DNA of 64,000 nt, taken from IMG/VR virus record IMGVR_UViG_3300024262_006558, positions 248,001 to 312,000 of that record; one strand, 5' to 3'. Numbering within the stretch: position 1 is the first letter of the stretch; every line of letters starts with the position of its first letter. This document shows positions 28,182 to 60,999 of the stretch, piece after piece. A model generated the notes under the pieces. That model did not search any database. It saw only the letters and a list, made by a program, of their open reading frames with translations, and was not told the origin of the DNA. The position numbers were made by a program, and so were the translations under genes.

Positions 28182-28886
28182 TTATATAGTTCTCCTAGTA
28201 ATTTTGTAGTCTAGTTCACCTCTAAGTTTCTTCTGTTGGAATTCTTGTCTCTTCAAGTAATCTAATATAAAATCCTTAGTAGGGTCTGAAACATATCCTT
28301 CATTAACTAGACGCCAAGGAGATTGGTTATGTACATTTCTTATATACATATCCGCTCCAGCATCGAGTAGAGCTTTAATCATATCCAGTGAAGCTCTTCG
28401 TTCTAGCGCGGCATACAATACGGTCCAGGAAGATGGTGTTGATTGGTAGTTAGGATCTACTCCTAATTCCAACAACAGCTTTAGAGCTTTGGGGGAATTC
28501 TGAGTTGCGGCTTGTACAATTGGAGGGGCCCATTGTTTAGCAATACACCTATGTATATCTACTCCTATTCCGTGTAGGTATTTGATACAATCTACCGAAT
28601 CATAAACGGAGCATATTATAATTAAGCTTCTACTATCTTTGTCTAATTCATCTCTATGAATAGCTCCTACGTATATTAGTTTTTTAAGCGCTAGTGGTTT
28701 ATCGTCTCTAATACATTGTACAGCTATCTCCATAAAATCTATATCTGTTTTGAAGTCTTTGAAGAATTCATTGGACAGGAACTGGAAAGATAGATAGTAG
28801 TCTGACCAATTTATTTGGTCGGCATGTTCTATGAGCCACTCTTCTGTTTTTATAAAATTTCTTTGAGGTATTTCACTTAAGTACAT
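28182..28886 (-). CDS. ankyrin-repeat protein with N-terminal Trp module
   Basis: TEEWLIEHADQINW head; PPIVQAATQNSPKALKLLLELGVDPN. Confidence 0.85.
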   Translation of the reverse strand: MYLSEIPQRNFIKTEEWLIEHADQINWSDYYLSFQFLSNEFFKDFKTDIDFMEIAVQCIRDDKPLALKKLIYVGAIHRDELDKDSRSLIIICSVYDSVDCIKYLHGIGVDIHRCIAKQWAPPIVQAATQNSPKALKLLLELGVDPNYQSTPSSWTVLYAALERRASLDMIKALLDAGADMYIRNVHNQSPWRLVNEGYVSDPTKDFILDYLKRQEFQQKKLRGELDYKITRRTI

Positions 28887-29563
28887 AAAACTTTTTCTTT
28901 AAATTCTTCTTCTCTATGCCTTTCTCCATTCAGATACCAAGATTTATCTCCATTGGCACATTCAATAGCTGGACCATCTTCACGATGTTTTTCTCCATTC
29001 AGATACCAAGATTTATCTCCATTGGCACATTCAATAGCTGGACCATCTTCACGATGTTTTTCTCCATTCAGATACCAAGATTTAGATCCATTGGCATATT
29101 CAACGGCTGGACCATCTACTCTATGTCTTTCTCCATTCAGATACCATTCTTTTTGTCCATCGGCATATTCAACGGCTGGACCATCTACTCTATGTCTTTC
29201 TCCATTCAGATACCAATATTTAGATCCATCGGCATATTCAATGGCTGGACCATCTACTCTATGTCTTTCTCCATTGAGATACCAATATTTAGATCCATCG
29301 CTCCATTCAACGGCGGGTCCATCTTCTCTATGCCTTTCTCCATTAAAAAACCAATACTTATCTCCATCGGCATGTTCAATAGCTGGACCATCTTCTCTAT
29401 GCCTTTTTCCATTCAGGTACCAGTTAGTTATTTCATACTTAAACATATCTCCGAATTCTTTGGAGAAGATATCGGAATGGTATTCGAATTTATCCCAATC
29501 AATAGAGTCGGCATGTTCAATGCACCACTTTTCTCCTTTATCTATGTAATCATTGGCGATCAT
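28877..29563 (-). CDS. Trp module + HREDGPA repeats (7 full units)
   Basis: GEKWCIEHADSIDWDKF head, then 22-aa repeats. Confidence 0.85.
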   Translation of the reverse strand: MIANDYIDKGEKWCIEHADSIDWDKFEYHSDIFSKEFGDMFKYEITNWYLNGKRHREDGPAIEHADGDKYWFFNGERHREDGPAVEWSDGSKYWYLNGERHRVDGPAIEYADGSKYWYLNGERHRVDGPAVEYADGQKEWYLNGERHRVDGPAVEYANGSKSWYLNGEKHREDGPAIECANGDKSWYLNGEKHREDGPAIECANGDKSWYLNGERHREEEFKEKVLCT

Positions 29564-30215
29564 TGTATTTTTTTTCGGTTAATTCTTTTCCATTGAGATA
29601 CCATGATTTATCTCCATCGGCATATTCAATAGCTGGACCATCTTCTCTATGCCTTTTTCCATTGAGATACCATGATTTATCTCCATCGGCATATTCAATA
29701 GCTGGACCATCTTCTCTATGTAGATTTCCATTGAAATACCACTCTTTATGTCCATTGGCCCATTCAACGGCTGGCCCATCTAATCTATGCCTTTCTCCAT
29801 TAATCCACCATTCTTTATGTCCATTGGCAGATTCAATAGCTGGACCATCTTCACGATGATGCTTTCCATTCAGAAACCATTCTTTATATCCATTGACATA
29901 TTCAATAGCTGGTCCATCTAATCTATGCCTTTCTCCATTAATCCACCATTCTTTATGTCCATTGGCATATTCACAAGCTGGACCATCTACTCTATGCCTT
30001 TTTCCATTCAGGTACCATTCTTTGTCTCCATTGACTAATTCAACAGCTGGACCATTTTCTCTATGTAGTTCTCCTTTGGAGTTTTTCCATACAAACCTTA
30101 TAATTTCATATTTAAAGGTTTCAAAGAAATCTTTAGAGTAATAATTCATATCGCATTGGAATGAGTTCCAGTCGAATGAGTCGGCGTGCTTTATGATATA
30201 TTCTTCTGTTTGCAT
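29550..30215 (-). CDS. Trp module + HREDGPA repeats (7 units)
   Basis: TEEYIIKHADSFDW head. Confidence 0.85.
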   Translation of the reverse strand: MQTEEYIIKHADSFDWNSFQCDMNYYSKDFFETFKYEIIRFVWKNSKGELHRENGPAVELVNGDKEWYLNGKRHRVDGPACEYANGHKEWWINGERHRLDGPAIEYVNGYKEWFLNGKHHREDGPAIESANGHKEWWINGERHRLDGPAVEWANGHKEWYFNGNLHREDGPAIEYADGDKSWYLNGKRHREDGPAIEYADGDKSWYLNGKELTEKKYNDRQ

Positions 30216-30841
30216 TGAGTTCTTTGTTTAAAGTCTTCTTCGGTTACTCGTTTACCATTGAGATACCAGTGTTTAGATCCATTGTATTTAATTACAGCTG
30301 GTCCATCTTCTCTATGAAGTTCATCATTGATATACCAAAAATTATCTCCATTGGCATATTCACAGGCTGGACCATCTTCTCTATGTAGTTTTCCATTCAG
30401 GTACCAAAAATTATCTCCATTGGATTTAATTACAGCTGGCTCATCTACTCTATGCCTTTTCCCATTCAGATACCATTCTTTGTCTCCATCGCTCCATTCA
30501 CAGGCTGGACCATCTACTCTATGCCTTTTCCCATTCAGATACCATTCTTTGTCTCCATCGGCATATTCACAGGCTGGACCATCTACTCTATGCCTTTTTC
30601 CATTAATAAACCAATGCTTATCTCCATCGGCATATTCAATAGCTGGCCCATCTACCCTATGACATTTACCATTCAGATACCAATGTTTAATTTCACTTTT
30701 AAACTGTACAGCAAAGTCTGTTGAGAACTTATCTGCATGGTATTCGAATTTATCCCAATCAATCTTATCGGCATTATTAATACACCATTCTTCTCCTAGT
30801 ATAGTATAGTCTTCTGCATTAATATTATCCTGTGTATTCAT
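30191..30841 (-). CDS. Trp module + HREDGPA repeats (6 units)
   Basis: GEEWCINNADKIDW head. Confidence 0.85.
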   Translation of the reverse strand: MNTQDNINAEDYTILGEEWCINNADKIDWDKFEYHADKFSTDFAVQFKSEIKHWYLNGKCHRVDGPAIEYADGDKHWFINGKRHRVDGPACEYADGDKEWYLNGKRHRVDGPACEWSDGDKEWYLNGKRHRVDEPAVIKSNGDNFWYLNGKLHREDGPACEYANGDNFWYINDELHREDGPAVIKYNGSKHWYLNGKRVTEEDFKQRTQCKQKNIS

Positions 30842-30886
30842 TATATTCTCTATAGTAGTTGAAGTGTTATTCTCCTATGTAATATA

Positions 30887-31648
30887 TTAATTATCTATAG
30901 TTGAAGTTGTGTTTTCTAATTGGGGTTCTCCATGAATGTGCCAACGTTTATGTCCATCGACATATTCAACAGATGGACCATCTTCACGATGTCTTTTTCC
31001 ATTTAGCCACCAGGATTTAGTTCCATTGGCAGATTCAATGGCTGGACCATCTACTCTATGTCTTTCTCCATTGAGATACCAAGCTTTATCTCCATCGGCA
31101 TATTCAATGGCTGGACCATCTACTCTATGTCTTTCTCCATTGAGATACCAGTGATTATCTCCATTAGTATATTCAACGGCTGGCCCATCTTCACGATGTT
31201 TTTCTCCATTCAGATACCAAGCTTTATGTCCATCGCTCCATTCAACGGCGGGTCCATCTTCACGATGTTTTTCTCCATTCAGATACCAAGCTTTATCTCC
31301 ATCAGAACATTCAACGGCGGGTCCATCTAATCTATGCCTTTCTCCATTAAGAAACCATTCTTTATATCCATTGGCCCATTCAACGGCTGGCCCATCTTCT
31401 CTATGTCTTTCTCCATTCAGATACCATTCTTCATCTCCATCGCTCCATTCAACGGCGGGTCCATCTTCTCTATGAAGCTTTCCATTCAGATACCAGTTAG
31501 TTATTTCATATCTAAACATTTCACCGAATTCTTTGGAGAAGATATCGGCATGATATTCAAATACATCCCAATCAATATTATCTGCATTAGCGATACACCA
31601 TTTTTCTCCTTTAGTTATATGGAAATTGTTTTCTAAGTTAATAGCCAT
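30887..31648 (-). CDS. Trp module + HREDGPA repeats (8 units)
   Basis: GEKWCIANADNIDW head. Confidence 0.85.
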   Translation of the reverse strand: MAINLENNFHITKGEKWCIANADNIDWDVFEYHADIFSKEFGEMFRYEITNWYLNGKLHREDGPAVEWSDGDEEWYLNGERHREDGPAVEWANGYKEWFLNGERHRLDGPAVECSDGDKAWYLNGEKHREDGPAVEWSDGHKAWYLNGEKHREDGPAVEYTNGDNHWYLNGERHRVDGPAIEYADGDKAWYLNGERHRVDGPAIESANGTKSWWLNGKRHREDGPSVEYVDGHKRWHIHGEPQLENTTSTIDN

Positions 31649-31651
31649 AAT

Positions 31652-32374
31652 CTATTTTGTATTTTCTATATCATCTAGATTATCTATGGTTACGGTTATT
31701 TCTCTAAAGACTCTTTTGTTACTATAGTTAGTTTCTCTGGTTTCCAGTATTCTAGCGCTTGGATATTTACTGGTTAGTAATTTAGAAAGTGCTTCGAAGT
31801 TTTTATCTGATGCTATTGTTTGGTTATCATCATTAAAAGACAGGCCGACTTTTTCCAGGTCTACTTTCTTTTCTTCTATGGTCTTACCTTTATCTCTATA
31901 CGGATCGCATAGCATACCTGAAAGGGTAAGGTTTATTCTACCTGATTGTCCAATGGAGAATTCCTTTATATGTCCTAGTCCTTCTAAGTTCCACCACATC
32001 CAGATATCATCATAGATATTCTTTATTCTTTCTCTAGCGTCTTCGTTGGTTACTTTGTTGCCCAGTTGTTTTCTAAGATCCCTGTTCTCGATGTTCAGGG
32101 ATCTTATCTCTGAGTATCGTTCTTTATTTTGTTGGTCTAGTACCCCTTCATAACCTAAAGTCTTCTGTAATTCTAGAACATAGTGTTCCGAAAGGGATAA
32201 CTGAGTTGCTTTCATTCCTTCAGTAAGTTTACCCGCTTTCAGTTGAGAGTGAAGATGTCCTATGTTAAATTTAATGTCATTATAGGATTTCTCTATAGCT
32301 TTTAGAAGATCTCCTTTGGGATCTTCTACAAGCGTTGTGTCTTCTTTATCAAATGTTAATTGTCTATCTTTCAT
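31652..32374 (-). CDS. hypothetical coiled-coil phage protein
   Basis: ORF track. Confidence 0.75.
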   Translation of the reverse strand: MKDRQLTFDKEDTTLVEDPKGDLLKAIEKSYNDIKFNIGHLHSQLKAGKLTEGMKATQLSLSEHYVLELQKTLGYEGVLDQQNKERYSEIRSLNIENRDLRKQLGNKVTNEDARERIKNIYDDIWMWWNLEGLGHIKEFSIGQSGRINLTLSGMLCDPYRDKGKTIEEKKVDLEKVGLSFNDDNQTIASDKNFEALSKLLTSKYPSARILETRETNYSNKRVFREITVTIDNLDDIENTK

Positions 32375-32894
32375 TATATTTTTCTTCGGTTAATTGTTTA
32401 CCATTCAGATACCACTCTTTATTTCCATCGGCATTTTCAATAGCTGGACCATCTAATCTATGCCTTTCTCCGTTGAGATACCAATATTTAGATCCATTGG
32501 CAGATTCAACAGCTGGGCCATCTAATCTATGACATTTACCATTGATATACCAATATTTAGATCCATCGTTCCATTCAATAGCTGGCTCATCTACTCTATG
32601 CTTCTTTCCATTCAGGTACCAGTATTTATCTCCATTGTCCAATTCCATAGCTGGGCCATCTAATCTATGACATTTACCATTGATATACCAGTATTTAGAT
32701 CCATTGTCAGATTCAATAGCTGGACCATCTACTCTATGGAATTTACCATCTGGGTTTTTACAAACATAAACTAGTATTTCATCTTTAAAGTCATCGGCAA
32801 ATTCCTTTGAATAGGTATTCATATCGCATTGGAATGAGTCCCAATCGAAAGAGTCGGCGTGCTTTATGATATATTCTTCTGAATACTTTTCCAT
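32364..32894 (-). CDS. Trp module + HREDGPA repeats (5 units)
   Basis: SEEYIIKHADSFDW head. Confidence 0.85.
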   Translation of the reverse strand: MEKYSEEYIIKHADSFDWDSFQCDMNTYSKEFADDFKDEILVYVCKNPDGKFHRVDGPAIESDNGSKYWYINGKCHRLDGPAMELDNGDKYWYLNGKKHRVDEPAIEWNDGSKYWYINGKCHRLDGPAVESANGSKYWYLNGERHRLDGPAIENADGNKEWYLNGKQLTEEKYNER

Positions 32895-32902
32895 GAATAA
32901 AT

Positions 32903-33883: not shown

Positions 33884-33889
33884 ACCTTT

Positions 33890-34630
33890 TTAATTTGTTT
33901 TAGCAACTACTAATTTCTTTTCTATTTCTGGCTGTACGTAATCTTTATGTTCTCTTATGAAATTTGCCATTTCCTCTTTATAGAAGAAATCGCAAAACAT
34001 GACAGCATTCCTGTCGTGATCATCCACCGCATTAATATCAGCTCCAAGTTCTAGAAGCAGGTCAACAGTTTTTCTTTGATCACTACTTGCCGCCATCATA
34101 AAGGCGGTGCTACCAACATATTCTCTATAGTCTACTCCTAATATTTCTACTAGTATTTTGACTAACGTGTTATAGCCTTGCTCTGCTGACCACATAAACA
34201 TTTCACCTAACTCAAGGGTTTCTTTTGCTTTAACGAAGAAATCTTTTGAAAAGTTGCGTAACAGTGGGAACTTTTCATCTTTATACTTAAGTTTGTGCAT
34301 GTTTTCTAAATACCAAACTTCTTTTTCTTCCGAGTTCTTAAACTTTTGTTTCTTTGCTTTAGATAAAAACTTCTTTGTATTTTTAGAGATTTCTTCACCA
34401 TCAATGTACCATGTTTTTTGGTTATATCTCTTGTCAATTGTGGCTGGACCATCTTCTCTATGCAATAGACCTTCCTCATTTTTCCAAAATAGAATTTTAA
34501 TTTCGCTTTTAAATTCCTTAACAAACTTTTTTGAGAAGATATTCATACTGCACTCAAAATCATCCCAGTTAAATGAATCGGCGTTCTCTGTTATATATTC
34601 TTCGTTATATGTGTCTCTAAATTTGTCCAT
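33890..34630 (-). CDS. chimeric Trp module + HREDGPA unit + second Trp-like module + ankyrin repeats
   Basis: NEEYITENADSFNW; LHREDGPA; GSTAFMMAASSDQRKTVDLLLELGADINAVD. Confidence 0.85.
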   Translation of the reverse strand: MDKFRDTYNEEYITENADSFNWDDFECSMNIFSKKFVKEFKSEIKILFWKNEEGLLHREDGPATIDKRYNQKTWYIDGEEISKNTKKFLSKAKKQKFKNSEEKEVWYLENMHKLKYKDEKFPLLRNFSKDFFVKAKETLELGEMFMWSAEQGYNTLVKILVEILGVDYREYVGSTAFMMAASSDQRKTVDLLLELGADINAVDDHDRNAVMFCDFFYKEEMANFIREHKDYVQPEIEKKLVVAKTN

Positions 34631-34637: not shown

Positions 34638-36044
34638 TTACCATTTGTCTTTAGTAAAGTACTTTTTTAATGAGTCATATATGTATATAGACGCTTCTCC
34701 TGTAGATCCTGTTTCATAAGATCCTCTATAACTATAATCTATCAAACTACTAGACACAGTTTGAACCATTTTTGTAATTGGCGTTGGAATTAGTGGTATA
34801 TCCATTCCATATTTATTAAGAGCTTTAATGAAGAAATTTCGAGCTATTACTGATGCTACCAAATATTTTGTAGAGTGGCTTAGTTCCGCGCATTTATCTA
34901 AAGCTTTTTCAATAGTAATGTGTGATCTCTTACTAGGATTAGCTCCGTGTTTCATCAGAACTTTAAAAGAATCTTGACAATCTTGCATAATAGAACAAAT
35001 AATAGCTGTCACTTTTTTCTTGTTAAGAAAATTCATATTTGCTCCAAAGTTTGCTAAGATTTCCAATTTTTCTACATCACCTTTCATTACACATTCATGC
35101 ACTAATCTGTTACCATTACTAACAAAAGAGTTTGGGTTAGCTCCGTTTTTCATGAACAACACTAGCACTCTCTTATCGCTATGATCGATAGCTTCTTCTA
35201 TAAACCTATTAGCATTTGACCCTTTCTTCAATAAAGACTCCATCTTTTTAAGAACTTTAACTCTAGTGTTTTTCTCTTCTTTATCATTTAACAAAGTGAT
35301 TGAGTTTATTATATTGGATGGATCAGTTTTCAACAAATAAGATAGAATTATGTCAGGGTCAATCCCCATTTCTATTAATAAATCAAATTTACTCTCTTTA
35401 TTTTCAAAAGTTTCTTGAAGGTAATCTCTTATATATAGATCTGTGTTGGAAAAACATTTAGATAATAAAATCATCTTCTCATCAAAATCATCTCTTTTAA
35501 AGAGATGATCATGTTTCCAATAATAAAAAATAAATGAAGATTTTAAACTTTCACTTGTTATTTGAGAGATTAATGCTTTAAAAACATTAATTTCCTGACA
35601 GAATATTTCATATAAAATATCATTGTCAGTAACCAGTTGTAATGATATAAAAGAAAACGTTCCAAGTTTACTTAATGCTTTCTCCACATAATTAAATTTT
35701 CTTTTAACTAATAAGAAAATTAAAAATTTAGACCCAAAACTTTTAAGTTTACTGTCGTCAACTACTATACTTTCAACTTTTTGTATAATCTTATTTAGTA
35801 TGTAGTTAAATACTATATCTAATTTTTTGTCATCTTTATTATCTATACAGTGAAGAAGTACTTCAAGAGCTTCATCTAATGTAAGATTTGTAGGTTCAGC
35901 TGAAAATTCAAAGAAGTATTTAAATAAGAAAGGTTTAGGAAGTTTAAATCTTTCTTTTTCGCTCATAGACTCAATATCAATGAATTCCATGTATTCATTG
36001 GCTATTTCTTCGCTGTATGGTAGTTTAAGGTTTATAGTAGCCAT
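34638..36044 (-). CDS. ankyrin-repeat protein with LPYSEE-type head
   Basis: GNRLVHECVMKGDVEKLEILANFGANMN. Confidence 0.8.
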   Translation of the reverse strand: MATINLKLPYSEEIANEYMEFIDIESMSEKERFKLPKPFLFKYFFEFSAEPTNLTLDEALEVLLHCIDNKDDKKLDIVFNYILNKIIQKVESIVVDDSKLKSFGSKFLIFLLVKRKFNYVEKALSKLGTFSFISLQLVTDNDILYEIFCQEINVFKALISQITSESLKSSFIFYYWKHDHLFKRDDFDEKMILLSKCFSNTDLYIRDYLQETFENKESKFDLLIEMGIDPDIILSYLLKTDPSNIINSITLLNDKEEKNTRVKVLKKMESLLKKGSNANRFIEEAIDHSDKRVLVLFMKNGANPNSFVSNGNRLVHECVMKGDVEKLEILANFGANMNFLNKKKVTAIICSIMQDCQDSFKVLMKHGANPSKRSHITIEKALDKCAELSHSTKYLVASVIARNFFIKALNKYGMDIPLIPTPITKMVQTVSSSLIDYSYRGSYETGSTGEASIYIYDSLKKYFTKDKW

Positions 36045-36544
36045 TAGGAAAAAGGTTTATGTGTTTTTTCGAACATCATTGTTTTAATGCTCGTAATATG
36101 TTTTGAATTTAAACCACTAGAAAGATCGTCAATTGCAAGCATTGCGCTATTACCATCATCTTTACTTTCTAGTTCAGGATCAGCTCCGTTTTTAAGTAAG
36201 GCTTTAACTATTTCCACATGCTTGACTGAAATAGATGGACAGTACCATTGTCCAGATTTTACTATTAGCCTGCAAATAATTGATTCGTTATGTCTTGGAG
36301 CTGTAATATTTGGATCAACTCCTTTACTTAGAAAGTCTTTTATAGCCTCTACGTCCAACACATCAATCATTTTGTTAAATATTCTTCTTTGAGATACTAC
36401 TGGAATAGCGCTAATTATTTCTTTAGGGACTTTACTAATTAATTTATAGGACACATTGTCCCAATCAATGAATTCAGCGAATTCATTGAGAACTTCTTCA
36501 CTAAAGTCTATTATGATAGGTATTTTAAGATTAGATTCACTCAT
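36044..36544 (-). CDS. ankyrin-repeat protein with Trp head
   Basis: FSEEVLNEFAEFIDW; IVKALLKNGADPE. Confidence 0.8.
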   Translation of the reverse strand: MSESNLKIPIIIDFSEEVLNEFAEFIDWDNVSYKLISKVPKEIISAIPVVSQRRIFNKMIDVLDVEAIKDFLSKGVDPNITAPRHNESIICRLIVKSGQWYCPSISVKHVEIVKALLKNGADPELESKDDGNSAMLAIDDLSSGLNSKHITSIKTMMFEKTHKPFS

Positions 36545-37370
36545 GTCTAAGGAGTTTATAAACGTCTATTTTATCTAATACTTCTTGAAAGTAATTTCTT
36601 ATAACGTTTTCAGGTGTGCTATTATATTCTGAGGTCTCAAGACATCCCTCAGAATAATCAACTACACCAAGCTTTGTATCATCTTTAGGTTTTAACGTCT
36701 TTTGTTCTTCATTGTATTGTTCTATGTTTTTCATGCCATATTTTACTAGTAGAAAATAGATTTCTTCAAATTCTCGTCCAGGACTATACCATTGGTGATA
36801 AGAGTCCCCTTCACTATCTAGGTAATATGGATTAGCTCCATATTTAAGCATAGATTCTATTATTATGTATTCAATATGAGAGCCTTCATATCCTACTACA
36901 AGTTCATTAAAAACACTGCTTCCGTCCTCTAATATTAGATTAGGGTCAGCTCCATGTCTCAATAAAGTCTTAACAATGTGAAAATTTTTGGAGTCCACCG
37001 ATCTTTCTAAAGACGTAAAACCACAAAAATCTTCTCCTATGTTAGGGTTAGCCCCTTTTTTTAGAAGATGTTCAACAAAATCTATTTTATAATTCTCAAT
37101 ACATAATGGAAGCATCGCTGTATCATTTTCAAATATAGTATTTACGTCAAACTCAGATATTTCTAATATCTTCTTAAACTTTTTAAGAGAGCATGTGTAA
37201 TCTTCTTTAATAATATATAGGATGATTGACTTCCAGTCCATTTCAGTTTTGAAATCTTCTAGGAATCCAATAGAAAAACCTAAAAAATGCTGAACCCATT
37301 CTTTAGGGAAGAAATTTTGAGGTTTATCGGCATTCTTTATATACCATTTTTCTGAATATTTTTTTGGCAT
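36537..37370 (-). CDS. ankyrin-repeat protein with Trp-like head
   Basis: SEKWYIKNAD; VEHLLKKGANPN, VKTLLRHGADPN. Confidence 0.85.
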   Translation of the reverse strand: MPKKYSEKWYIKNADKPQNFFPKEWVQHFLGFSIGFLEDFKTEMDWKSIILYIIKEDYTCSLKKFKKILEISEFDVNTIFENDTAMLPLCIENYKIDFVEHLLKKGANPNIGEDFCGFTSLERSVDSKNFHIVKTLLRHGADPNLILEDGSSVFNELVVGYEGSHIEYIIIESMLKYGANPYYLDSEGDSYHQWYSPGREFEEIYFLLVKYGMKNIEQYNEEQKTLKPKDDTKLGVVDYSEGCLETSEYNSTPENVIRNYFQEVLDKIDVYKLLRHE

Positions 37371-37831
37371 TTTTGTCTATTTTCAAATTTAGTAAGATAA
37401 GATAAGCATCTTTTAAATTTCCTAAATGCTACTCTATTTTTTCTAGTATAACCTTTTCCAGATGCTATAACCACTTTTAATTTAAGTAACTTTCTTGATA
37501 AATTTAGATTTGTATAACTATCTTCATCAATAAGAAACTTAATAGCTTCTATGTTACCATGCATAATGGAAATAACCCAAGGAGTTTCTCCATTAGAATC
37601 ATAAAGATACTTAAATTCTAACAAAACAGCAACTCTTCTCATTTCTATTGATCTACTTTTACATTGACAAAGATAACAGAAATAGTTTATGAGATTTATT
37701 TCATCTTTAAAATGCAATATAAAATCAGTAGAGAAGTCTGGCAATCTGTGCCAGACTTCTTTTTCCCAATTAGTTATTAGATCAGCATTTCTAGTAGCCC
37801 ACTCTTCGGTTATTAACCTACCCATTCCCAT
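37337..37831 (-). CDS. Trp head + degenerate ankyrin repeat
   Basis: TEEWATRNADLITNW; GETPWVISIMHGNIEAIKFLID. Confidence 0.7.
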   Translation of the reverse strand: MGMGRLITEEWATRNADLITNWEKEVWHRLPDFSTDFILHFKDEINLINYFCYLCQCKSRSIEMRRVAVLLEFKYLYDSNGETPWVISIMHGNIEAIKFLIDEDSYTNLNLSRKLLKLKVVIASGKGYTRKNRVAFRKFKRCLSYLTKFENRQKCQKNIQKNGI

Positions 37832-38481
37832 TTATTATAGTCTTGATCTTTAGATTCTGAAGCTCCAGCTCCAGGAACAGCCCCTAAGTTAAGCAAATAT
37901 TCTTTTACTATTGTGTAAGGGTTAGCGTTATCATAAAGATAGTTTAATTCATTGTTATATAGATAATCTAATGGAGTCCAACCTTTATGACATTTATCAT
38001 TAATATTAGCACCAGCTTCAATAAGATAGCGATGTATATTATCTTCTATATGAGATTGCTCCAAAGAAATCATCAATGGAGATTTACCTGTTGATATACC
38101 TTTTGAGTTTGGATCCGCTCCGCATTGTATAAGCATGTCTAAGGAGTTTTTGAGACCGTGGTATGCGGCAGCACATAATGAAGGAGTTATTGTATTAAGA
38201 GGCTTCTTTCTTAGCCAATACCTAACATAATTAATATCCATTATAGTGCTTAGAGTATTTATCAAATGGATTTTTTCATTATGTATAGCCCATGAAAATA
38301 ATACACCTAAATTTAGTTCATTTTTAAAGTCATTTAAAAACTCAGCATCAAAACCAGATATCTCTTCAAAATATTCATACCATTCTTCTATTTGATCCGC
38401 ATTTTGCACAAACCATTCCTGTCCTGAAGATCTTCTACGAATCTTTCTGGATTCATAATTAAAATATCCACTAGCTTCCAT
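37813..38481 (-). CDS. ankyrin-repeat protein with Trp head
   Basis: QEWFVQNADQIEEW; GKSPLMISLEQ...LIEAGANIN. Confidence 0.85.
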   Translation of the reverse strand: MEASGYFNYESRKIRRRSSGQEWFVQNADQIEEWYEYFEEISGFDAEFLNDFKNELNLGVLFSWAIHNEKIHLINTLSTIMDINYVRYWLRKKPLNTITPSLCAAAYHGLKNSLDMLIQCGADPNSKGISTGKSPLMISLEQSHIEDNIHRYLIEAGANINDKCHKGWTPLDYLYNNELNYLYDNANPYTIVKEYLLNLGAVPGAGASESKDQDYNKWEWVG

Positions 38482-39613: not shown

Positions 39614-39614
39614 A

Positions 39615-42800: not shown

Positions 42801-42827
42801 TGCTTATGAATTTCATCATATGTTTGA

Positions 42828-46389: not shown

Positions 46390-46423
46390 ATTGACAAATA
46401 TAGTTTTGTTATGCCAATAAAAC

Positions 46424-46458
46424 AAAAAAGACCTAAACTTTCGCTTAGGTCTTTTTTT
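46424..46458. terminator. intrinsic terminator (bidirectional)
   Basis: AAAAAAGACCTAA...TTAGGTCTTTTTTT. Confidence 0.7.
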
Positions 46459-49761: not shown

Positions 49762-49872
49762 ACTAATATTAAAATTTATGTTCAACCTTAGAAATATACT
49801 AACGTATTTCTATGTGATAATGTTGCAAATATAATGTAAAATTTAATTCAGGTCAAGTAAAAGAATAGATTT

Positions 49873-52466: not shown

Positions 52467-53470
52467 GTTAAAATATCTATGATAAGCTTTATAAGTCCAG
52501 TTAGAATGCCTATACAGGCCCACAGTTTGTATAATCGTTTAATATAGTCTACTTTTTCGTCCTTTATGGTATCATCAAATTTAAAAATTAAACCCCCCAT
52601 AAAAGTATACAATAAAGCTCCTACAACTTTAACTGCAAAGAAAGTAATTAATAAATCATTAAATTTGGTACCATATATAAAATAGACCATTGAACTTACA
52701 ACGGATGGAATTGCAATACAATAACATAAAAACATTATTCCTGTAACTTTCCAGAATCTTTTTACATTTATATTATTATTGTTTTCTAATATTTCATAAT
52801 TTTCGGCAATTATTCTTTCATTTTCTTCCTCTATTTCCCTGCACTCTCTTGCTTGTGTTACTAGTTCTTCAGCTATTCTAGCCTCAAATTCTTGCATTAT
52901 TTCATACGTAGGAACATCCAATAAGCCTGAGAAGTCACCTTCAATCATTTTAGTTAATGTAATATTTCCTCCGTTCTTAGCATTTTTATAAACTATATTC
53001 ATCATGGAGCTAACATACTTATTGCCATAAATGGTTTTAATAATAACTAAAGCTTTAAACACTACCGAGCTGAACTCTTTTTTTGTGGAATTAAAACTTA
53101 TAAAATGTTCAATATCTTCAAGTATTAAACGATTTTTATTCCCTTTTTCTCTAAAGCATCTCAATGACTCCATCATTAAAGTGATCCCGCCTTTATCATA
53201 AGGATGGTTCATAAAATAATCACTTAAATAAGAAATTATTTTTTTATTTGCAATCCTTTCTTCATAAACTACTTGTTTCACTAATTCCAATGGAGCATTA
53301 AATAATATCCTAATGTCAAATTGTTCCCAATCTATAATGTCAAAATAGTCTTCTATAACATTATCTGTAATAGGTAAATTTACTTTAATGAATTCAGGTT
53401 CAGATTTTGGATTTTTATAATATACTTTTCTCGAATACATGTCTTGTGTTATTGATATTACATCCATCAT
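52463..53470 (-). CDS. Trp head + C-terminal membrane segments
   Basis: NLPITDNVIEDYFDIIDW; 3 hydrophobic helices at the C-terminus. Confidence 0.7.
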   Translation of the reverse strand: MMDVISITQDMYSRKVYYKNPKSEPEFIKVNLPITDNVIEDYFDIIDWEQFDIRILFNAPLELVKQVVYEERIANKKIISYLSDYFMNHPYDKGGITLMMESLRCFREKGNKNRLILEDIEHFISFNSTKKEFSSVVFKALVIIKTIYGNKYVSSMMNIVYKNAKNGGNITLTKMIEGDFSGLLDVPTYEIMQEFEARIAEELVTQARECREIEEENERIIAENYEILENNNNINVKRFWKVTGIMFLCYCIAIPSVVSSMVYFIYGTKFNDLLITFFAVKVVGALLYTFMGGLIFKFDDTIKDEKVDYIKRLYKLWACIGILTGLIKLIIDILT

Positions 53471-54345
53471 ATAGGCCAAGTTAAAATGAATGATATAATA
53501 TATAAAAACACATTAGATACTAAATTTGTAATAAAATCTATTCTATCATTATCCTCTATATTAAATTTTCTTTTTCTATAATAATCTTCATAGCAAAGAG
53601 CGCCGCAACCTACAAACTGAACTATGAAAAACAATTTCAAAGACATGTTTTCAGAAATTGGAGTATTAGACCAAGCATTAAGTGTAAAGAAAAAAAACAA
53701 GGGGACAATTACAGCATAAACAGAAAATGAAACCATAAAATGGTTAAGGTAGATGTTTTCTAAATGTTTTGAATTTTCTCTAACATTTAATTGAAGCATC
53801 TTTTTATGTTCAGAAATTCTACCTTCTTTAGTTTTCAAATTAGGATTTAAATTTTCAACATACCTCACTAATTCCCTATTATTGCTTCTAGTCGCTTCTT
53901 TGTGTATCTCAAACAAATACAATTTCTTTTTACCCTCATCTGGGTGTGAGTTCATTAAATCAGCTAATGCTGTAGATAATAAATTGAAGCTATCATCAGA
54001 GTAACCACCAACTCTCTTATAGAAATCTCTAAGTGAATATATAATTTTGTACATCCTTTTTGGGTGATCTCTTGCATCAGACATCAAACCTCTTAAAACT
54101 TCAGCACTTTTCTTATCCAACTCTGCTCGATCTTCAACATGATTCAAGAAAGTGTCAAAAATACGTATAACCATAAGACCATCCATGTCGGTGGTGTGCC
54201 TTGTTATCTTTCGTATTTTAGAAGCTTCATATGTAAGAAACCAAGAATAATCAAACGTTCTCCAATTGATAATGTCCATATATTCTATGACATTATCCTG
54301 GCTAGGATCAATTTGAACATCTAACAATTGTTTTTTAGTTGTCAT
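53467..54345 (-). CDS. Trp head + C-terminal membrane segments
   Basis: PSQDNVIEYMDIINW; hydrophobic C-terminus. Confidence 0.7.
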   Translation of the reverse strand: MTTKKQLLDVQIDPSQDNVIEYMDIINWRTFDYSWFLTYEASKIRKITRHTTDMDGLMVIRIFDTFLNHVEDRAELDKKSAEVLRGLMSDARDHPKRMYKIIYSLRDFYKRVGGYSDDSFNLLSTALADLMNSHPDEGKKKLYLFEIHKEATRSNNRELVRYVENLNPNLKTKEGRISEHKKMLQLNVRENSKHLENIYLNHFMVSFSVYAVIVPLFFFFTLNAWSNTPISENMSLKLFFIVQFVGCGALCYEDYYRKRKFNIEDNDRIDFITNLVSNVFLYIISFILTWPI

Positions 54346-55232: not shown

Positions 55233-56243
55233 TTAATTCATAAAACTATTACTGTTATCTGCGTCTTCATCTCCATAGTCATAATCATCTCGATAGTCAT
55301 AATCATCACAATGAATATCGTAGTAAGAAGTGTCATTTACAGACACTAATCCCTTAGTGGGGCTTGTATCAATTTCACGTTTACTTAGAGCATGTTGTAG
55401 CTCTTTTCTAACACCTCTTTTGTTAGCTATATCATCAATTATATTAATCATAGCCTCTATAGCAGGAGGTTCTATATCAGACACAACTTCTTTGACATTA
55501 TCCGTAACAAAATTCAAAAGCCAAAATAATGCGTCATTAGCTACTTCAGATCTATTGATTAAACTTTTAAAAATTGGTAACTCTGGATTATCCTTATGCT
55601 CATATCCTCCGACCACAGATAACAATTGAGGTTTCACTTGATCAGCTACAAATGAGTACATTGACGTGAAGTATTTTTTAAATGTTTCGTCCTCATATCT
55701 TGCACACATGGCTGATGCAGCTAAATATGTATTGTATCCCCAAGTAGCTCCATTCTCCAAGAAAAACTCTACCATCTCCACATTATTACATGCAATAGAA
55801 AATGATAACGGAGAAGCGTCTTGTCCACTATTAACTTTTTCTAAGAAATTGTATATTGGACGAGCATTGAGTTTCATATTATCACTATGAATCTTTTTAA
55901 TTATATCATTACTATGGTGAGAAATGCATAATATTATGACTAACTGAAGATTAGTAGCCTTCATTAAATCAGAAATATTTTTTACCGTAGCTGGATTATT
56001 TCCTAGAAGAGAGTTTAGTAAATCAATTCGATTATCTTCAAGAATAACTGTTCTATAAATATCGTACCTCTTTGCTTCGCTGACTAACAAGGAAACTTCT
56101 TTTATAGTGTCATCATCGAAAGCTTTAAAAGCTTTGACTTCTACTTTTTCCCAATCAATTACATCCATGTACTCGTTAGCGAATTCATTAGTAAGTTCCA
56201 TATGTATTGGAACTGTAGTATGTATTTTATTATCCCTAGGCAT
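55233..56243 (-). CDS. Trp head + ankyrin-like repeat protein
   Basis: LTNEFANEYMDVIDW; ASPLSFSIACNNVEMVEFFLENGA. Confidence 0.75.
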   Translation of the reverse strand: MPRDNKIHTTVPIHMELTNEFANEYMDVIDWEKVEVKAFKAFDDDTIKEVSLLVSEAKRYDIYRTVILEDNRIDLLNSLLGNNPATVKNISDLMKATNLQLVIILCISHHSNDIIKKIHSDNMKLNARPIYNFLEKVNSGQDASPLSFSIACNNVEMVEFFLENGATWGYNTYLAASAMCARYEDETFKKYFTSMYSFVADQVKPQLLSVVGGYEHKDNPELPIFKSLINRSEVANDALFWLLNFVTDNVKEVVSDIEPPAIEAMINIIDDIANKRGVRKELQHALSKREIDTSPTKGLVSVNDTSYYDIHCDDYDYRDDYDYGDEDADNSNSFMN

Positions 56244-56267
56244 ATAAACAAAGTTAAGACTTTAAAA

Positions 56268-56639: not shown

Positions 56640-56658
56640 ATTGTTATGGTTTCATTTA

Positions 56659-57993: not shown

Positions 57994-58036
57994 ATAGGCA
58001 AATATATGGAAACCATACTCTTAAAACAAATTAGTA

Positions 58037-58610: not shown

Positions 58611-58620
58611 TCTACATCAT

Positions 58621-59445
58621 TTATTCTTTTTTTGGAGTTACAGTTTTTACTTGTTCTACACCTTTCTCTTTTACAGAGAAATGGTCATCTATATTAACAA
58701 TTGATGTATATATAGAGAACGTTATCATAAGCGCTATTATACCCATAACCACCCTATATATAATTATCCGTCTTTTTACGCTTTTCTCAATTCTCTCTCT
58801 ATTATTTTGACCTTCTGCTTCCGTTAGGTCTCGAAGCTGGTCTAATAAATTTTGCAATGCTGGATTTGCTGCAACTTCACCTGCACCTGCACCTGCATCA
58901 ACTGCATATTCATCTTCAAAACCAACCTCATCTTCTAAACCAACCTCATCTTCTAAACTTTCTTTCTCTTGTTTATATGCAGCTAGACTTTGAAATTCGA
59001 AATTACTTACGATTTTATCTTTGTGTTTTTCTAAAAACTCGGTAGATAGATCTTGGCATAAAAAAATTGCACACCAATCTAACACATCTTGATATTCTTC
59101 AATAAAATCTTCACTAAGTTTTTGAGTCTCAGATATCAAGTCACCATCAAATAATTCTATATTCTTACTTATTATGCTTTCTTCTATATAATAATTTCTA
59201 CATATATCTTTATATGCTGCAATTACGGATTGATTATATATTCTAGCTTTAAAGTTATATAAGTCATCAACTGGATTTCGTGAAACATCTACCACTATTT
59301 TTCTGTAACACAAATCTGGATTTAGTGATTTTTGTGGAGTTGTAGATTCTTTCAGCTCAGCAATCGAATTACCTACCAGGCTAATTAAACTAATATATTC
59401 ATCAATTTTATCCTTAAACTCTTTTTCTGTCGTAATGGTTTTCAT
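58621..59445 (-). CDS. Trp-repeat protein with C-terminal TM anchor
   Basis: LSEDFIEEYQDVLDWCAIFLCQDLSTEFLEKHKDKI. Confidence 0.75.
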   Translation of the reverse strand: MKTITTEKEFKDKIDEYISLISLVGNSIAELKESTTPQKSLNPDLCYRKIVVDVSRNPVDDLYNFKARIYNQSVIAAYKDICRNYYIEESIISKNIELFDGDLISETQKLSEDFIEEYQDVLDWCAIFLCQDLSTEFLEKHKDKIVSNFEFQSLAAYKQEKESLEDEVGLEDEVGFEDEYAVDAGAGAGEVAANPALQNLLDQLRDLTEAEGQNNRERIEKSVKRRIIIYRVVMGIIALMITFSIYTSIVNIDDHFSVKEKGVEQVKTVTPKKE

Positions 59446-59469
59446 ATGATCAAATATAAATAAAAGTTA

Positions 59470-59700
59470 TTAATAAATCATAAATTCTGAAAACTCTTTT
59501 AAAAAATAATCTTCTTTTTGAGTTGTATCCAGTACTTCCCATACTAAATCGAATTTAAATTGTTGATAGAAGTTATGTGAAAAATTATCTGGATTCATAA
59601 AAAAAGAGAATGCATGCCAATCTACCTCATCAGCATGGTCAATTATTTCTTGTTCAGTTACAAGTTTATATTCATGATAGTTACTCCATTTTTTTACCAT
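59470..59700 (-). CDS. stand-alone Trp module protein
   Basis: TEQEIIDHADEVDW...FSHNFYQQFKFDLVW. Confidence 0.7.
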   Translation of the reverse strand: MVKKWSNYHEYKLVTEQEIIDHADEVDWHAFSFFMNPDNFSHNFYQQFKFDLVWEVLDTTQKEDYFLKEFSEFMIY

Positions 59701-60499
59701 CTAACAATCCATTTCTTATTTCATAATTATCTTTCATAATCTTCCATCTAGACCATTCTTTAGGCGTAATTGATACATCATGATCCATCAAGCATCTATA
59801 TTTAGACTCTTCTGAAACTTTTATGTTTCTAATAATGTTATCCCATGTTATTTTATCTGCAAACTCAATTAAAAAGTCTAGTGACATTGATTGCTTTAGA
59901 GATAAACTTGTCCAATCAAGTTCATTTGAGTAATCTTTCATAAACTGTTCAGAAATAACTCTGCTAAATGAAATTGTTTTAAAGAAACTTTTAAGGGAGC
60001 TAGACAGTTCTGGTTCGGACAATAAATAAGAATTATTATCTATTATAGCCCTCTGTCTTTCAATCAACTCTCTCATGAAATCTTCTTCATCACCTAAGTT
60101 GATTGACATATTATTAAGAATGTAAGCGGGAACTAAAGAGTCTATAAATTCTTTAGCAAAATTTAAGCTCATAGTTTTGTTTGCGCTTATTAATGACCAA
60201 TTGAGTTCCCCTCTAAAACTTTCAAAGAAATCTGAGCTGAACTTTTTTATATCCATGCTCATTGCTAAAGCTTCAAAATCTATCTTGTCAGCCCAGCATG
60301 TTGCTTCTTCTTCGGTTATGGTTGGGTAATTAAAAACTTTATCTTTAATCAATTTTTCTTTAAACGACATGCCTGAGTTTTCCCTCAGCCAGTCTTTTAT
60401 GAAGTTTAAATCTTCATCCCTATGATCTAAACTATAAGCTCTTCCTTGGGTTACAAGTTGAGAGGTATAGGCTTTTTTTACATCTTCTTTATTTGCCAT
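59681..60499 (-). CDS. tryptophan-repeat family protein
   Basis: Multiple LxW..IS...MSLxF repeats. Confidence 0.8.
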   Translation of the reverse strand: MANKEDVKKAYTSQLVTQGRAYSLDHRDEDLNFIKDWLRENSGMSFKEKLIKDKVFNYPTITEEEATCWADKIDFEALAMSMDIKKFSSDFFESFRGELNWSLISANKTMSLNFAKEFIDSLVPAYILNNMSINLGDEEDFMRELIERQRAIIDNNSYLLSEPELSSSLKSFFKTISFSRVISEQFMKDYSNELDWTSLSLKQSMSLDFLIEFADKITWDNIIRNIKVSEESKYRCLMDHDVSITPKEWSRWKIMKDNYEIRNGLLDGKKME

Positions 60500-60525
60500 T
60501 TACATTAATGTAATAAAACATATAC

Positions 60526-60999
60526 TTATTTTGTAGCTAGTTTGTATTTAAACTTCTCTTTAACTGATGGGGAAATTCTTTCATTATTCATAATAGATCT
60601 CCAACAAACTTCATCTTGATATTCTTCCACTAATTCATTAGTGATATATTTTGAATAACTTAACGCTGCAAAGTCCATTGTGTCAGCAAAATATCTAATG
60701 TTTTCCTGATTCTCTAAAAACTTCTTGCCTTGACTCATAGTTATAGACCAGTTAATTTTATCTTTGAATTGCTTGAAGAATTCTATATCACTATTTTTTT
60801 TAGAAAGCTCTATCCAAGATAAAGAGTCACGAAACTCTTCTATAAAGTCTAGAGATAAATCTTCACGCATTGATATAGCGTTCCAAAATATTGACTTTGT
60901 GTTTAATTTAAAATAATCAAATGAATATTTTTCAAAATCACAGTTTTTAGAAAACTCTAGCCAAAAACTTAAATTACTTTGATTCTTTTGTATCTTCAT
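60526..60999 (-). CDS. tryptophan-repeat family protein
   Basis: IFWNAISMREDLSLDFIEEFRDSLSWIELS. Confidence 0.8.
   Translation of the reverse strand: MKIQKNQSNLSFWLEFSKNCDFEKYSFDYFKLNTKSIFWNAISMREDLSLDFIEEFRDSLSWIELSKKNSDIEFFKQFKDKINWSITMSQGKKFLENQENIRYFADTMDFAALSYSKYITNELVEEYQDEVCWRSIMNNERISPSVKEKFKYKLATK

What the first reader, a model, noticed from the sequence alone, without database searches (positions are those of the whole stretch)
28182..60999. About 25 genes share one short N-terminal Trp module fused to interchangeable binding domains
Seen: a ~35-45-aa head, roughly (T/S)EE(W/Y/F)IxxxADxIxW...FSxxFxxxFKxEI, or its variant (L/V)P(Y/F)SxExxxEYxxxIDW. It begins most of the ankyrin proteins (28182, 33890, 34638, 36044, 36537, 37337, 37813, 38471, 41636, 45775, 55233), five HREDGPA proteins (28877-32894) and two membrane proteins (52463, 53467). 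It also occurs nearly alone (42828, 59470), internally or C-terminally (49873, 58621), and as pure tandem repeats (21271, 59681, 60526). One gene (33890) stacks module-HREDGPA-module-ankyrin. Established: the unit resembles the tryptophan-repeat family of entomopox/giant viruses and some phages, and constant-head/variable-binder architecture is how F-box-type adaptors work. Inference: an undescribed adaptor arsenal in which the head docks on a common phage partner (a scaffold, protease, or packaging or secretion address) while the variable solenoids capture different host or defence proteins.
Basis: partly seen in the sequence, partly recalled or inferred. Interest (0 to 1): 0.85.

Follow-up and report, generated by a model that had tools for sequence, protein, structure and literature searches.

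The report
Shared two-repeat head on phage binders
A roughly 494-kb bacteriophage genome carries about 25 genes that share a short, acidic, tryptophan-rich N-terminal piece, which is two units of the viral "tryptophan repeat" family of unknown function, joined to ankyrin stacks, MORN-like arrays or membrane anchors; the pattern is real, but what the shared piece does is untested.

Summary
Thirteen genes start with head type A and seven with head type B. Five more genes carry the same unit internally or in tandem. Leave-one-out profiles recover 19 of the 20 heads far above decoys. All 12 ankyrin ORFs in the window carry a head.

The head is not a new domain. It is two about 23-aa units of the viral "tryptophan repeat gene family" (entomopoxviruses, giant viruses, Bacillus phage G gp556-563, Listeria phage LPJP1). 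That family has no Pfam model, no solved structure and no known function.

Corrections to the finding:
- 42828 is not a lone head. It is the front of a head-B+ankyrin gene split by a +2/-2 indel patch, and the gene is intact in sister contigs.
- Seven further HREDGPA genes on the + strand have no head.
- Heads mostly diverge together with their bodies, so swaps were few.

The head is always more conserved than the body, is strongly acidic, and exists as a conserved 76-aa stand-alone protein. Related huge phages carry the same arsenal.

The adaptor idea (a common docking handle) is the reading I favour slightly, at about 0.4. It is unproven, and a purely structural cap remains a serious rival.

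The parts
28182..28886 (-). Head A (window 28731-28853) + ankyrin repeats, 234 aa
   Evidence: Head HMM E 2.9e-18, leave-one-out 1.5e-13. Pfam Ank_2 1.4e-14.
28877..32894 (-). Five head-A + HREDGPA (MORN-like, 23-aa unit) genes: 28877-29563, 29550-30215, 30191-30841, 30887-31648, 32364-32894. An unrelated gene, 31652-32374, sits among them. Heads lie at 29423-29542, 30096-30215, 30683-30802, 31496-31615 and 32769-32888.
   Evidence: Head HMM E about 1e-19 to 1e-20, leave-one-out 1e-16 to 4e-18. 69-bp tandem repeats. Pfam DUF6745 just below its cut-off. Atlas neighbours are DUF6745 and MORN_2 clusters.
33890..34630 (-). Hybrid gene: head A (34493-34612), one HREDGPA unit, a degenerate second head, then ankyrin
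   Evidence: Its head groups with the MORN-linked heads. Relatives P0001 and P0002 have two significant heads.
34638..36544 (-). Two head-B + ankyrin genes: 34638-36044 (head 35907-36035) and 36044-36544 (head 36395-36523)
   Evidence: 36044 also hits the foreign-array unit HMM at 4e-3.
36537..38529 (-). Three head-A + ankyrin genes: 36537-37370, 37337-37831, 37813-38529. Heads lie at 37230-37361, 37688-37816 and 38305-38430.
38471..39613 (-). Head B (39473-39601) + ankyrin, 380 aa
41636..42328 (-). Head A (42164-42271) + ankyrin, 230 aa; this is the modelled example
   Evidence: AF2 pLDDT 90, pTM 0.84. Head helices 17-22, 30-37 and 42-52 run into the ankyrin stack with no low-confidence linker. 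About 165 aa of the body match solved ankyrin proteins.
42330..43142 (-). One head-B + ankyrin gene, split here into 42828-43142 (head 43014-43142) and 42330-42800 by a +2/-2 indel patch
   Evidence: Intact 270-aa gene in sister contigs L002 and L003.
45775..46425 (-). Head A (46264-46389) + ankyrin
   Evidence: Leave-one-out 4e-12. Ankyrin profile hit.
49873..50475 (-). 200-aa protein with an internal head-A-like pair at aa 110-152 (window 50020-50148)
   Evidence: Head HMM E 2.5e-3 against the best decoy at 0.23. This is the weakest internal case.
52463..54345 (-). Two membrane proteins with head B: 52463-53479 (head 53261-53389, TM aa 243-338) and 53467-54345 (head 54196-54324, TM aa 200-290)
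   Evidence: 53467 is marginal by profile.
55233..56243 (-). Head B (56085-56213) + weak ankyrin region + acidic tail
58621..59445 (-). Two canonical units, internal (59008-59118), followed by an acidic stretch and one TM segment (aa 225-252)
   Evidence: Foreign-array unit HMM E 1.5e-10..
59470..59700 (-). Stand-alone head A, 76 aa (head 59536-59664)
   Evidence: Leave-one-out 1.4e-9. A 76-aa relative, P0010, was found in the profile search.
59681..60999 (-). Two pure tryptophan-repeat proteins: 59681-60499 (head-A-like pair 60194-60322 plus further units) and 60526-60999
   Evidence: AF2 of 59681: pLDDT 84, pTM 0.71, a solenoid of short helices. BFVD matches to tryptophan repeat family proteins. 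phrog_3532, unknown function.
21217..21831 (+). Divergent tryptophan-repeat protein outside the stated range (the finding's '21271')
   Evidence: Head HMM E 1.8e-4, unit HMM 2.5e-3.
23242..25488 (+). Seven head-less HREDGPA genes that serve as a contrast set. Six begin with the constant start MVEQEPICKTT (or a close variant) and all seven end in a near-constant tail, LTEEEFNKKITELNVSKIHELW or a close variant. 23242-23448 begins differently.
   Evidence: No head HMM hit.

Best explanation
The window is part of a 494,080-bp metagenomic contig of a virus of bacteria. Its minus-strand block holds an expanded arsenal of repeat proteins.

What the head is. The shared head is two consecutive about 23-aa units of the viral tryptophan-repeat solenoid (canonical unit LSEEFIxxFxDKIDWxxISxxQx). 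It comes in two subtypes, A and B. It is joined without a linker to ankyrin stacks, to MORN-like HREDGPA hairpin arrays, or to soluble regions of membrane-anchored proteins.

How the family grew (inferred). A few ancient fusions were followed by whole-gene tandem duplication, with rare recombination such as 33890.

Mechanism I commit to (inferred). The head is a small, autonomous, strongly acidic protein-protein contact module kept under stronger constraint than the bodies. It gives all these proteins one common contact. That contact is either the phage's own tryptophan-repeat array proteins (59681, 60526, 21217 and two more just outside the window) or another shared, probably basic, partner. 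The divergent C-terminal solenoids bind different targets.

Shown: the module, its family, its placement, its higher conservation, its charge, and its recurrence in related phages. Not shown: any partner, any target, or any effect.
For: Module and significance.

It is the tryptophan repeat:
- A unit HMM built only from foreign arrays hits the window genes.
- Head-A and head-B HMMs hit the arrays of Listeria phage LPJP1 and Bacillus phage G gp556-563.
- Fold matches to proteins named tryptophan repeat family.

The head is an add-on, not a folding need:
- Seven head-less HREDGPA paralogues lie in the same window.
- Nine other viral contigs with HREDGPA arrays show no head in the stretches fetched.
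- There is a stand-alone 76-aa head with a 76-aa relative elsewhere.
- The module occurs internally in non-solenoid proteins.

Constraint: the head is more conserved than the body in 91 of 91 pairs and in all four likely ortholog pairs compared, though by only one point (42 vs 41%) in one of them. All 12 ankyrin ORFs keep it.

Charge: the 13 A heads carry net -4 to -11 per about 40 aa (one is neutral), averaging about -15 per 100 aa; B heads carry net -2 to -7. Bodies range from -9 to +12 and average about -1; canonical units are at -7.

The same A and B heads sit on most genes of the matching arrays in related phages from two other samples.

The whole-library profile search found the head at the N terminus of MORN-like proteins (29, plus 2 that also carry ankyrin) and of ankyrin proteins (13, plus the same 2) among 130 cluster representatives.

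Virus of bacteria: a sigma factor and phage-family hits.
Against: - No partner was identified, and no multimer modelling was possible.
- The conserved head positions coincide with the generic core and capping positions of the repeat, so conservation alone does not prove a shared surface.
- AF2 shows the head rigidly continuous with the ankyrin stack. This fits a cap as well as an adaptor.
- Heads cluster by body type (29 label changes against 54.8 when shuffled), so they co-diverge with their bodies.
- Two subtypes would need two docking modes.
- In Atlas clusters assigned mainly to Nucleocytoviricota the same repeat fold is found fused to F-box or DarT domains, which suggests it serves there as the binder.
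Confidence: 0.4

Rival explanations
1. Structural cap or solenoid extension. The two units only shield and extend the N-terminal end of the following repeat stack. They are shared because all these genes descend by duplication from a few fused ancestors, and there is no common partner.
For: - AF2 gives pLDDT 91-96 through the head, no linker, and pTM 0.84 for the whole chain.
- The conserved positions are those of the generic repeat.
- Heads co-diverge with bodies.
Against: - The head sits on three unrelated body types.
- HREDGPA arrays occur without it in the same genome and in other viruses.
- A conserved stand-alone head protein exists.
- The head is more conserved than the internal repeats and is unusually acidic.
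Confidence: 0.3
2. Address tag. The N-terminal head directs the proteins to a common place, such as packaging into the capsid for co-injection, a phage-built compartment, or the membrane.
For: - The head is strictly N-terminal in all 20 fused genes.
- It is constant across otherwise diverse cargo.
- Three family members are membrane-anchored.
Against: - No cleavage motif, protease or structural gene is linked to it in the window.
- The module also occurs internally and in long arrays.
- It folds as part of the body in the AF2 model.
- No proteomic data exist. The phage G paper's supplementary tables are not held.
Confidence: 0.12
3. The head is simply part of each protein's own target-binding surface, a mini tryptophan-repeat binder next to a second binder. 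On this reading the arsenal as a whole may act on a eukaryote that harbours or grazes on the bacterial host, as proposed for other phage-borne ankyrins.
For: - Tryptophan-repeat arrays appear to be the binding part in F-box and DarT fusions of giant viruses (PMC7728225).
- The combination of ankyrin, MORN-like and tryptophan repeats is typical of giant viruses and intracellular bacteria (established knowledge).
Against: - A binding surface for diverse targets should vary, yet the head is the most conserved part.
- Nothing is known of the host or its ecology.
- No secretion signal was seen by eye in the listed translations; no prediction tool was run.
Confidence: 0.15

Closest known systems
Viral 'tryptophan repeat gene family' (entomopoxviruses MSV027/029/205 and AMV029; giant viruses; Bacillus phage G gp556-563; a cluster of at least 9 genes in Listeria phage LPJP1)
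   Same: - The same about 23-aa unit with a conserved Trp and an LSxxF(I/L) start.
- The same predicted solenoid of short helices.
- The same habit of forming multigene clusters in very large viral genomes (PMC12484599).
- Function unknown in every case.
   Different: Known members are arrays of 4-13 or more units. Here most copies are a fixed two-unit N-terminal piece fused to a different repeat class or to a membrane anchor. This piece has two subtypes and is more acidic than canonical units.
F-box, PRANC and BTB substrate adaptors (poxvirus ankyrin/PRANC proteins, giant-virus F-box proteins including AMV254, Legionella AnkB)
   Same: Both pair a small constant module with a variable repeat binder and are expanded as a multigene family in a large virus.
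   Different: - No F-box, PRANC or BTB signature was found in any head.
- The host is a bacterium without the SCF machinery.
- In giant viruses the tryptophan repeat appears to be the variable binder attached to the F-box, not the constant docking part.
MORN, MORN_2 (YwqK) and DUF6745 hairpin-repeat proteins of phages
   Same: The HREDGPA bodies have the same 23-aa hairpin-type unit. Their nearest Atlas clusters carry DUF6745 or MORN_2. Similar arrays occur in Agrobacterium phage Atu_ph07 and Celeribacter phage P12053L.
   Different: No Pfam model reaches its cut-off. The other viral arrays examined lack the tryptophan head.
Phage-borne ankyrin proteins (sponge 'ankyphages', the Wolbachia phage WO eukaryotic association module); comparison drawn from established knowledge, not tested here
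   Same: Both are ankyrin repeat proteins encoded by viruses of bacteria.
   Different: Here there are 12 paralogues in 64 kb, and each has a tryptophan-repeat head. No link to a eukaryote is shown.

Membership tests
Tryptophan repeat gene family | About 23-aa unit with the motif LSxxF(I/L)xxFxDx(I/V)xW | tested here: met
   - A unit HMM built from foreign arrays only hits 58621 (1.5e-10), 59681 (1e-9), 60526 (2.6e-7), 21217, 36044, 59470, 36537 and 33890, all above the first decoy at 0.74.
- Profile-profile scores are B-unit E 5.7e-9 and A-unit E 3e-7, and none of 60 shuffles reached them.
Tryptophan repeat gene family | Similarity to proteins that carry the family name | tested here: met
   - Foldseek on BFVD matched MSV027, MSV029, MSV205, AMV029 and the MySEV, AHEV and CBEV 'tryptophan repeat gene family' proteins at E 2e-6 to 2e-3, and phage G gp563 at 1.8e-8.
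- Head-A and head-B HMMs hit phage G gp556 and gp560, which PMC12484599 names as this family.
Tryptophan repeat gene family | Tandem array of several units | tested here: not met
   The 20 N-terminal heads have only two units. This feature is met only by 59681, 60526 and, weakly, 21217. The heads are therefore fragments of the family's repeat rather than typical members.
F-box / PRANC-type adaptor | F-box, F-box-like or PRANC sequence signature in the constant module | tested here: not met
   No such Pfam hit appeared among the 20 proteins scanned (19 head- or repeat-bearing genes, among them 6 of the 13 A-head and 6 of the 7 B-head proteins), at E up to 1 or up to 0.05.
F-box / PRANC-type adaptor | The constant module binds a fixed hub (Skp1/cullin or an analogue) | not testable with these tools
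   No multimer modelling or interaction data were available. Bacterial hosts lack SCF (established knowledge). Sigma factor at 19877-20515.
F-box / PRANC-type adaptor | Small constant module plus variable repeat binder, expanded as a gene family | tested here: met
   Head identity 35% against body 19% in 91 of 91 pairs. The bodies fall into three classes.
Ankyrin repeat proteins | Pfam Ank models above cut-off and an ankyrin fold | tested here: met
   - Ank or Ank_2 above the curated cut-off in 28182, 33890, 34638, 36044 (barely), 36537, 37813, 38471 and 41636.
- Below cut-off in 37337 and 55233.
- 42330 and 45775 were not scanned with Pfam; they are the two top hits of an in-window ankyrin profile seeded on 42330.
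- The AF2 model of 41636 matches solved ankyrin proteins at E 1e-9.
MORN_2 / DUF6745 repeats (the HREDGPA bodies) | Pfam model above cut-off | tested here: inconclusive
   DUF6745 scores 26.6 bits against a cut-off of 27, and there is no MORN hit. The nearest Atlas clusters carry DUF6745 or MORN_2, with scores 0.89-0.95. No relative has a solved structure.
DUF1699 (PF08004) | Pfam model hit | tested here: inconclusive
   Precomputed PF08004 marks appear on many canonical arrays and on structural neighbours. My own scan found no hit at E up to 0.1.
Capsid-targeting or packaged internal proteins | N-terminal signal recognised during head assembly, and presence in virions | not testable with these tools
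   The phage is uncultured and no proteome exists.

The most novel reading that the evidence does not exclude
The two-unit acidic head is a true docking handle that plugs more than 20 different binders (ankyrin, MORN-like, membrane-anchored) into one phage-encoded hub, for instance the tryptophan-repeat array proteins. This would be a bacterial-virus counterpart of the F-box or PRANC adaptor systems of eukaryotic viruses. It would also give the first function for the tryptophan repeat family, whose function is still listed as unknown.
Probability: 0.25. Interest if true: 0.8.

Novelty: new variant of a known kind. Interest (0 to 1): 0.5.

Why it matters
Tryptophan-repeat proteins are abundant in giant viruses, entomopoxviruses and jumbo phages. 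One search returned at least 2,973 relatives of a single array. Yet the family has no Pfam model, no solved structure and no known role.

This genome shows the repeat in a reduced two-unit form that is kept on every ankyrin protein and is more conserved than the rest of each protein. That is the kind of natural dissection that can point to a function.

It also documents a clade of huge phages, seen in at least three metagenome sources, that devotes tens of kilobases to modular repeat binders. This strategy is so far associated with viruses of eukaryotes. If the head has a common partner, it would define a new adaptor logic in phage-host conflict. If it does not, the region is still a clear case of multigene-family expansion in a phage.

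Tried and rejected
Searches that gave nothing:
- Word-indexed searches restricted to the head region returned only the queries.
- The DNA search of the phage collection found no relative.
- PDB sequence searches with an array, an HREDGPA protein and the head profile found nothing.
- A PDB fold search with the array model found nothing at E 1e-3 or better.
- NCBIfam and PADLOC gave nothing specific.
- The original entomopoxvirus genome papers and the phage G supplementary tables are not held, so the family's published definition could not be read.
- The first shuffle control timed out and was repeated successfully.

Ideas considered and rejected:
- An F-box in the N termini of foreign array proteins that look F-box-like by eye: Pfam was negative.
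- A stop-codon reassignment to explain 42828/42330: the cause is a +2/-2 indel patch.
- A chance motif: excluded by decoys and leave-one-out.
- A recent DNA-level repeat or gene conversion as the source of head similarity: tandem-repeat detection finds only the HREDGPA units, and heads are 30-45% identical at the protein level.
- A giant virus of eukaryotes as the source: a bacterial-type sigma factor and jumbo-phage homologues argue for a phage.

Full report
SOURCE AND SETTING

The window is AT-rich (28-38% GC). Genes run on the + strand up to about 25.9 kb and on the - strand from 28.2 kb.

An exact look-up of one of its proteins places the window on JGI contig Ga0210003_1000004, which is 494,080 bp long (window position + 248,000). 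Near-identical pieces occur in two other samples. IMG/VR lists it as UViG_3300024262_006558.

Several results mark it as a very large virus of bacteria:
- A bacterial-type sigma factor at 19877-20515.
- A DNA methyltransferase.
- A 699-aa protein shared with jumbo phages.
- Several PHROG families.

No close relative is in the GenBank phage collection at the DNA level.

Yes.

Head A. The N-terminal about 40 aa of 13 genes align with invariant A, D, F and F and near-invariant E and S.
- An HMM of this head scores each gene at E 1e-16 to 1e-20 against all six-frame ORFs of the window. The best reversed or shuffled decoy scores 0.23.
- With each gene left out of the model in turn, it is still recovered at E 4e-18 to 6.5e-6.

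Head B. A second head, (L/V)P(Y/F)SxExxxEYxxxIDW, starts seven genes.
- Leave-one-out recovers six of them at E 2e-5 or better.
- 53467 is marginal by profile but is 65% identical to 52463 over the core 20 residues.

Relation of A to B. The two do not find each other by HMM. Profile-profile comparison aligns them in register with a score of 19.9. The maximum for column-shuffled profiles is 15.1, and none of 60 shuffles reached the observed score.

Other placements are all significant, 49873 most weakly:
- Internal: 49873 and 58621.
- Tandem: 59681, 60526 and 21217.

Bodies. Pfam confirms ankyrin repeats behind the heads. An in-window ankyrin profile finds 12 ankyrin ORFs, and every one carries a head. 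52463 and 53467 each end in three hydrophobic segments, and 58621 has one.

In the stated range, about 24 of 43 genes carry the module.

THREE CORRECTIONS

1. 42828 is not a head "nearly alone". In two sister contigs, 42828 and 42330 form one 270-aa head-B+ankyrin gene. In the window a +2 and a -2 indel enclose a frameshifted patch of about 12 codons that contains stops.

2. The HREDGPA family is larger than stated. Seven more genes on the + strand (23242-25488) have no head. Six of them begin with the constant start MVEQEPICKTT or a close variant, and all seven end in a constant tail close to LTEEEFNKKITELNVSKIHELW.

3. The head is not one 35-45-aa unit. It is two units of about 23 aa.

WHAT THE HEAD IS

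I searched a profile of head A against 1.84 billion cluster representatives. It found 130 proteins at E 1e-3 or better. They fall into these groups:
- Proteins with one N-terminal head followed by HREDGPA-type repeats: 29, plus 2 that also carry ankyrin.
- Proteins with one N-terminal head followed by ankyrin repeats: 13, plus the same 2.
- Pure arrays of a 23-aa unit, LSEDFIREFKDKVDWxxISxYQx: 61.

A unit HMM built from these foreign arrays alone hits 58621, 59681 and 60526 strongly. It also hits several heads of both types above the first decoy.

Profile-profile scores link both heads to the unit: B-unit E 5.7e-9 and A-unit E 3e-7. Shuffled profiles reach at most 18.9 and 17.6, against observed scores of 32.6 and 26.6.

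In the other direction, the window's own head-A and head-B HMMs hit cultured-phage arrays:
- A cluster of at least 9 array genes in Listeria phage LPJP1.
- gp556-563 of Bacillus phage G.

The AF2 model of 59681 (pLDDT 84, pTM 0.71) is a solenoid with one short helix about every 12 residues.
- It has no counterpart among solved structures.
- Among predicted viral structures it matches phage G gp558/560/562/563.
- It also matches entomopoxvirus proteins named "tryptophan repeat gene family" and giant-virus proteins.

A 2025 paper annotates phage G gp556 and gp560 with that family name and states that the function is unknown (PMC12484599).

The repeat has no Pfam model that reaches threshold. Its PHROG families are of unknown function. 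It is very abundant: at least 2,973 relatives of one array at E 1e-5 or better.

HOW THE FAMILY IS BUILT AND EVOLVES

Related phages from two other read sets are syntenic at about 45-50% protein identity. They carry the same arrays, with A or B heads on most genes.

At the position of the window's single split head-B gene, one relative has three head-B+ankyrin paralogues. This shows turnover by tandem duplication.

On a tree of 105 heads (42 columns, weakly resolved):
- B heads form one well-supported group, made of ankyrin and membrane proteins.
- Ankyrin-linked A heads mostly group together.
- HREDGPA-linked A heads group together.
- The hybrids 33890 and P0027 sit inside the HREDGPA-linked group.
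- Body labels need 29 changes, against 54.8 when shuffled; none of 200 shuffles was as low.

The modules are therefore "interchangeable" only over long times. There were a few fusions and rare recombination, followed by whole-gene duplication.

CLUES TO FUNCTION

1. Conservation. The head is more conserved than the body in 91 of 91 pairs (35% vs 19%). In likely ortholog pairs the figures are 70/47, 65/44, 54/45 and 42/41%. Alignment error in divergent bodies inflates this gap somewhat.

2. Retention. The head is kept on all 12 ankyrin ORFs.

3. Not needed for folding of HREDGPA arrays. Seven head-less paralogues exist here. Nine other viral contigs with such arrays show no head in the stretches fetched.

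4. Stand-alone form. The head exists as a 76-aa protein with a 76-aa relative elsewhere.

5. Charge and composition.
   - Heads carry net -4 to -11 per about 40 aa.
   - Type A averages about -15 per 100 aa.
   - Bodies average about -1 (range -9 to +12) and canonical units about -7.
   - Heads are 20-25% aromatic.

6. Predicted structure. In the AF2 model of 41636 (pLDDT 90, pTM 0.84) the head is confidently placed, with pLDDT 91-96. It runs straight into the first ankyrin helix. Only the ankyrin part, about 165 aa, matches solved structures.

7. Conserved positions. The conserved head residues are the generic core and helix-capping positions of the repeat.

8. Use elsewhere. Atlas neighbours show the same repeat fold fused to F-box or DarT domains in clusters assigned mainly to Nucleocytoviricota. 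AMV254 is reported as a tryptophan-repeat protein with an F-box (PMC7728225). This suggests the repeat serves there as the binder rather than the dock.

INTERPRETATION

Points 1-5 argue that the head has a function of its own that is common to all paralogues. Points 6-8 fit a structural cap equally well and weaken the analogy with F-box heads.

I therefore rank the readings as follows:
- Shared contact handle, about 0.4.
- Passive cap inherited by duplication, about 0.3.
- Part of each protein's own binding surface, possibly aimed at a eukaryote, about 0.15.
- Address tag, about 0.12.

No partner, target or phenotype is shown by anything done here.

COMPARISON WITH KNOWN SYSTEMS

By sequence and fold the module is a piece of the tryptophan repeat family. 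It fails that family's "tandem array" feature, because the heads have only two units.

It has the architecture of F-box and PRANC adaptors but none of their signatures, and its host lacks their hub.

The bodies are ordinary ankyrin repeats and MORN-like repeats, the latter below Pfam thresholds.

VERDICT

This is a new architectural variant of a known, function-less viral repeat family, in a clade of uncultured huge phages. Interest is moderate. It would be high if a common partner were found.

Noticed in passing
window 47539-47672 (-): A tRNA gene (Rfam 55.6 bits) has about 61 extra bases inside the anticodon loop, and ARAGORN did not call it. The flanks of the loop would give CUUCCAA, a Gly-UCC-like loop, if the insert follows U33. 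The insert is far shorter than a group I intron.
   Followed up: partly
window 23242-25488 (+): Seven tandem HREDGPA genes lack the Trp head. Three are 92-aa near-copies with a 272-bp period. Six share the start MVEQEPICKTT or a close variant, and all seven share a C-terminal tail close to LTEEEFNKKITELNVSKIHELW. This tail is a second 'constant end' on the same kind of repeat body.
   Followed up: partly
window 42800-42830; L002 1750-1940: Frameshift variants exist between near-identical contigs. In the window a +2/-2 indel patch splits the head-B+ankyrin gene. In contig Ga0114918_10000033 the 654-aa neighbour (window 39615-41579) is instead split into 40 + 591 aa. These are either population variants or assembly errors.
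   Followed up: partly
window 19877-20515 (+): An RNA polymerase sigma factor homologue (phrog_1740, E 5e-24).
   Followed up: no
window 47686-49785 (-): A 699-aa protein of unknown function is shared with jumbo phages of Rhodococcus, Xanthomonas, Mycobacterium, Rhodobacter and others (phrog_33734, E 2e-95). It is also conserved in the related phage L007.
   Followed up: no
window 50658-52523 (-) and 1441-2766 (+): A 621-aa protein has a PcfJ-like domain (E 1e-11). A 441-aa protein has a C-terminal DNA methyltransferase domain (PHROG E 1e-48).
   Followed up: no
window 39615-41579 (-), 32903-33883 (-), 31652-32374 (-): Three head-less genes with no family hit are embedded in the head-gene arrays. 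The 654-aa one is kept next to the arrays in the related phages (L007 10743-12641; L009 3827-7862, two copies). They are candidates for a functional link to the arsenal.
   Followed up: no
L004 12786-14146 (same contig, just beyond the window's right end) and L004 10001-10843: The genome holds more family members outside the window: two further Trp-repeat proteins and one more head-A+ankyrin gene (P0065). They lie next to RNA ligase, PNKP, dCMP deaminase and CinA genes.
   Followed up: partly
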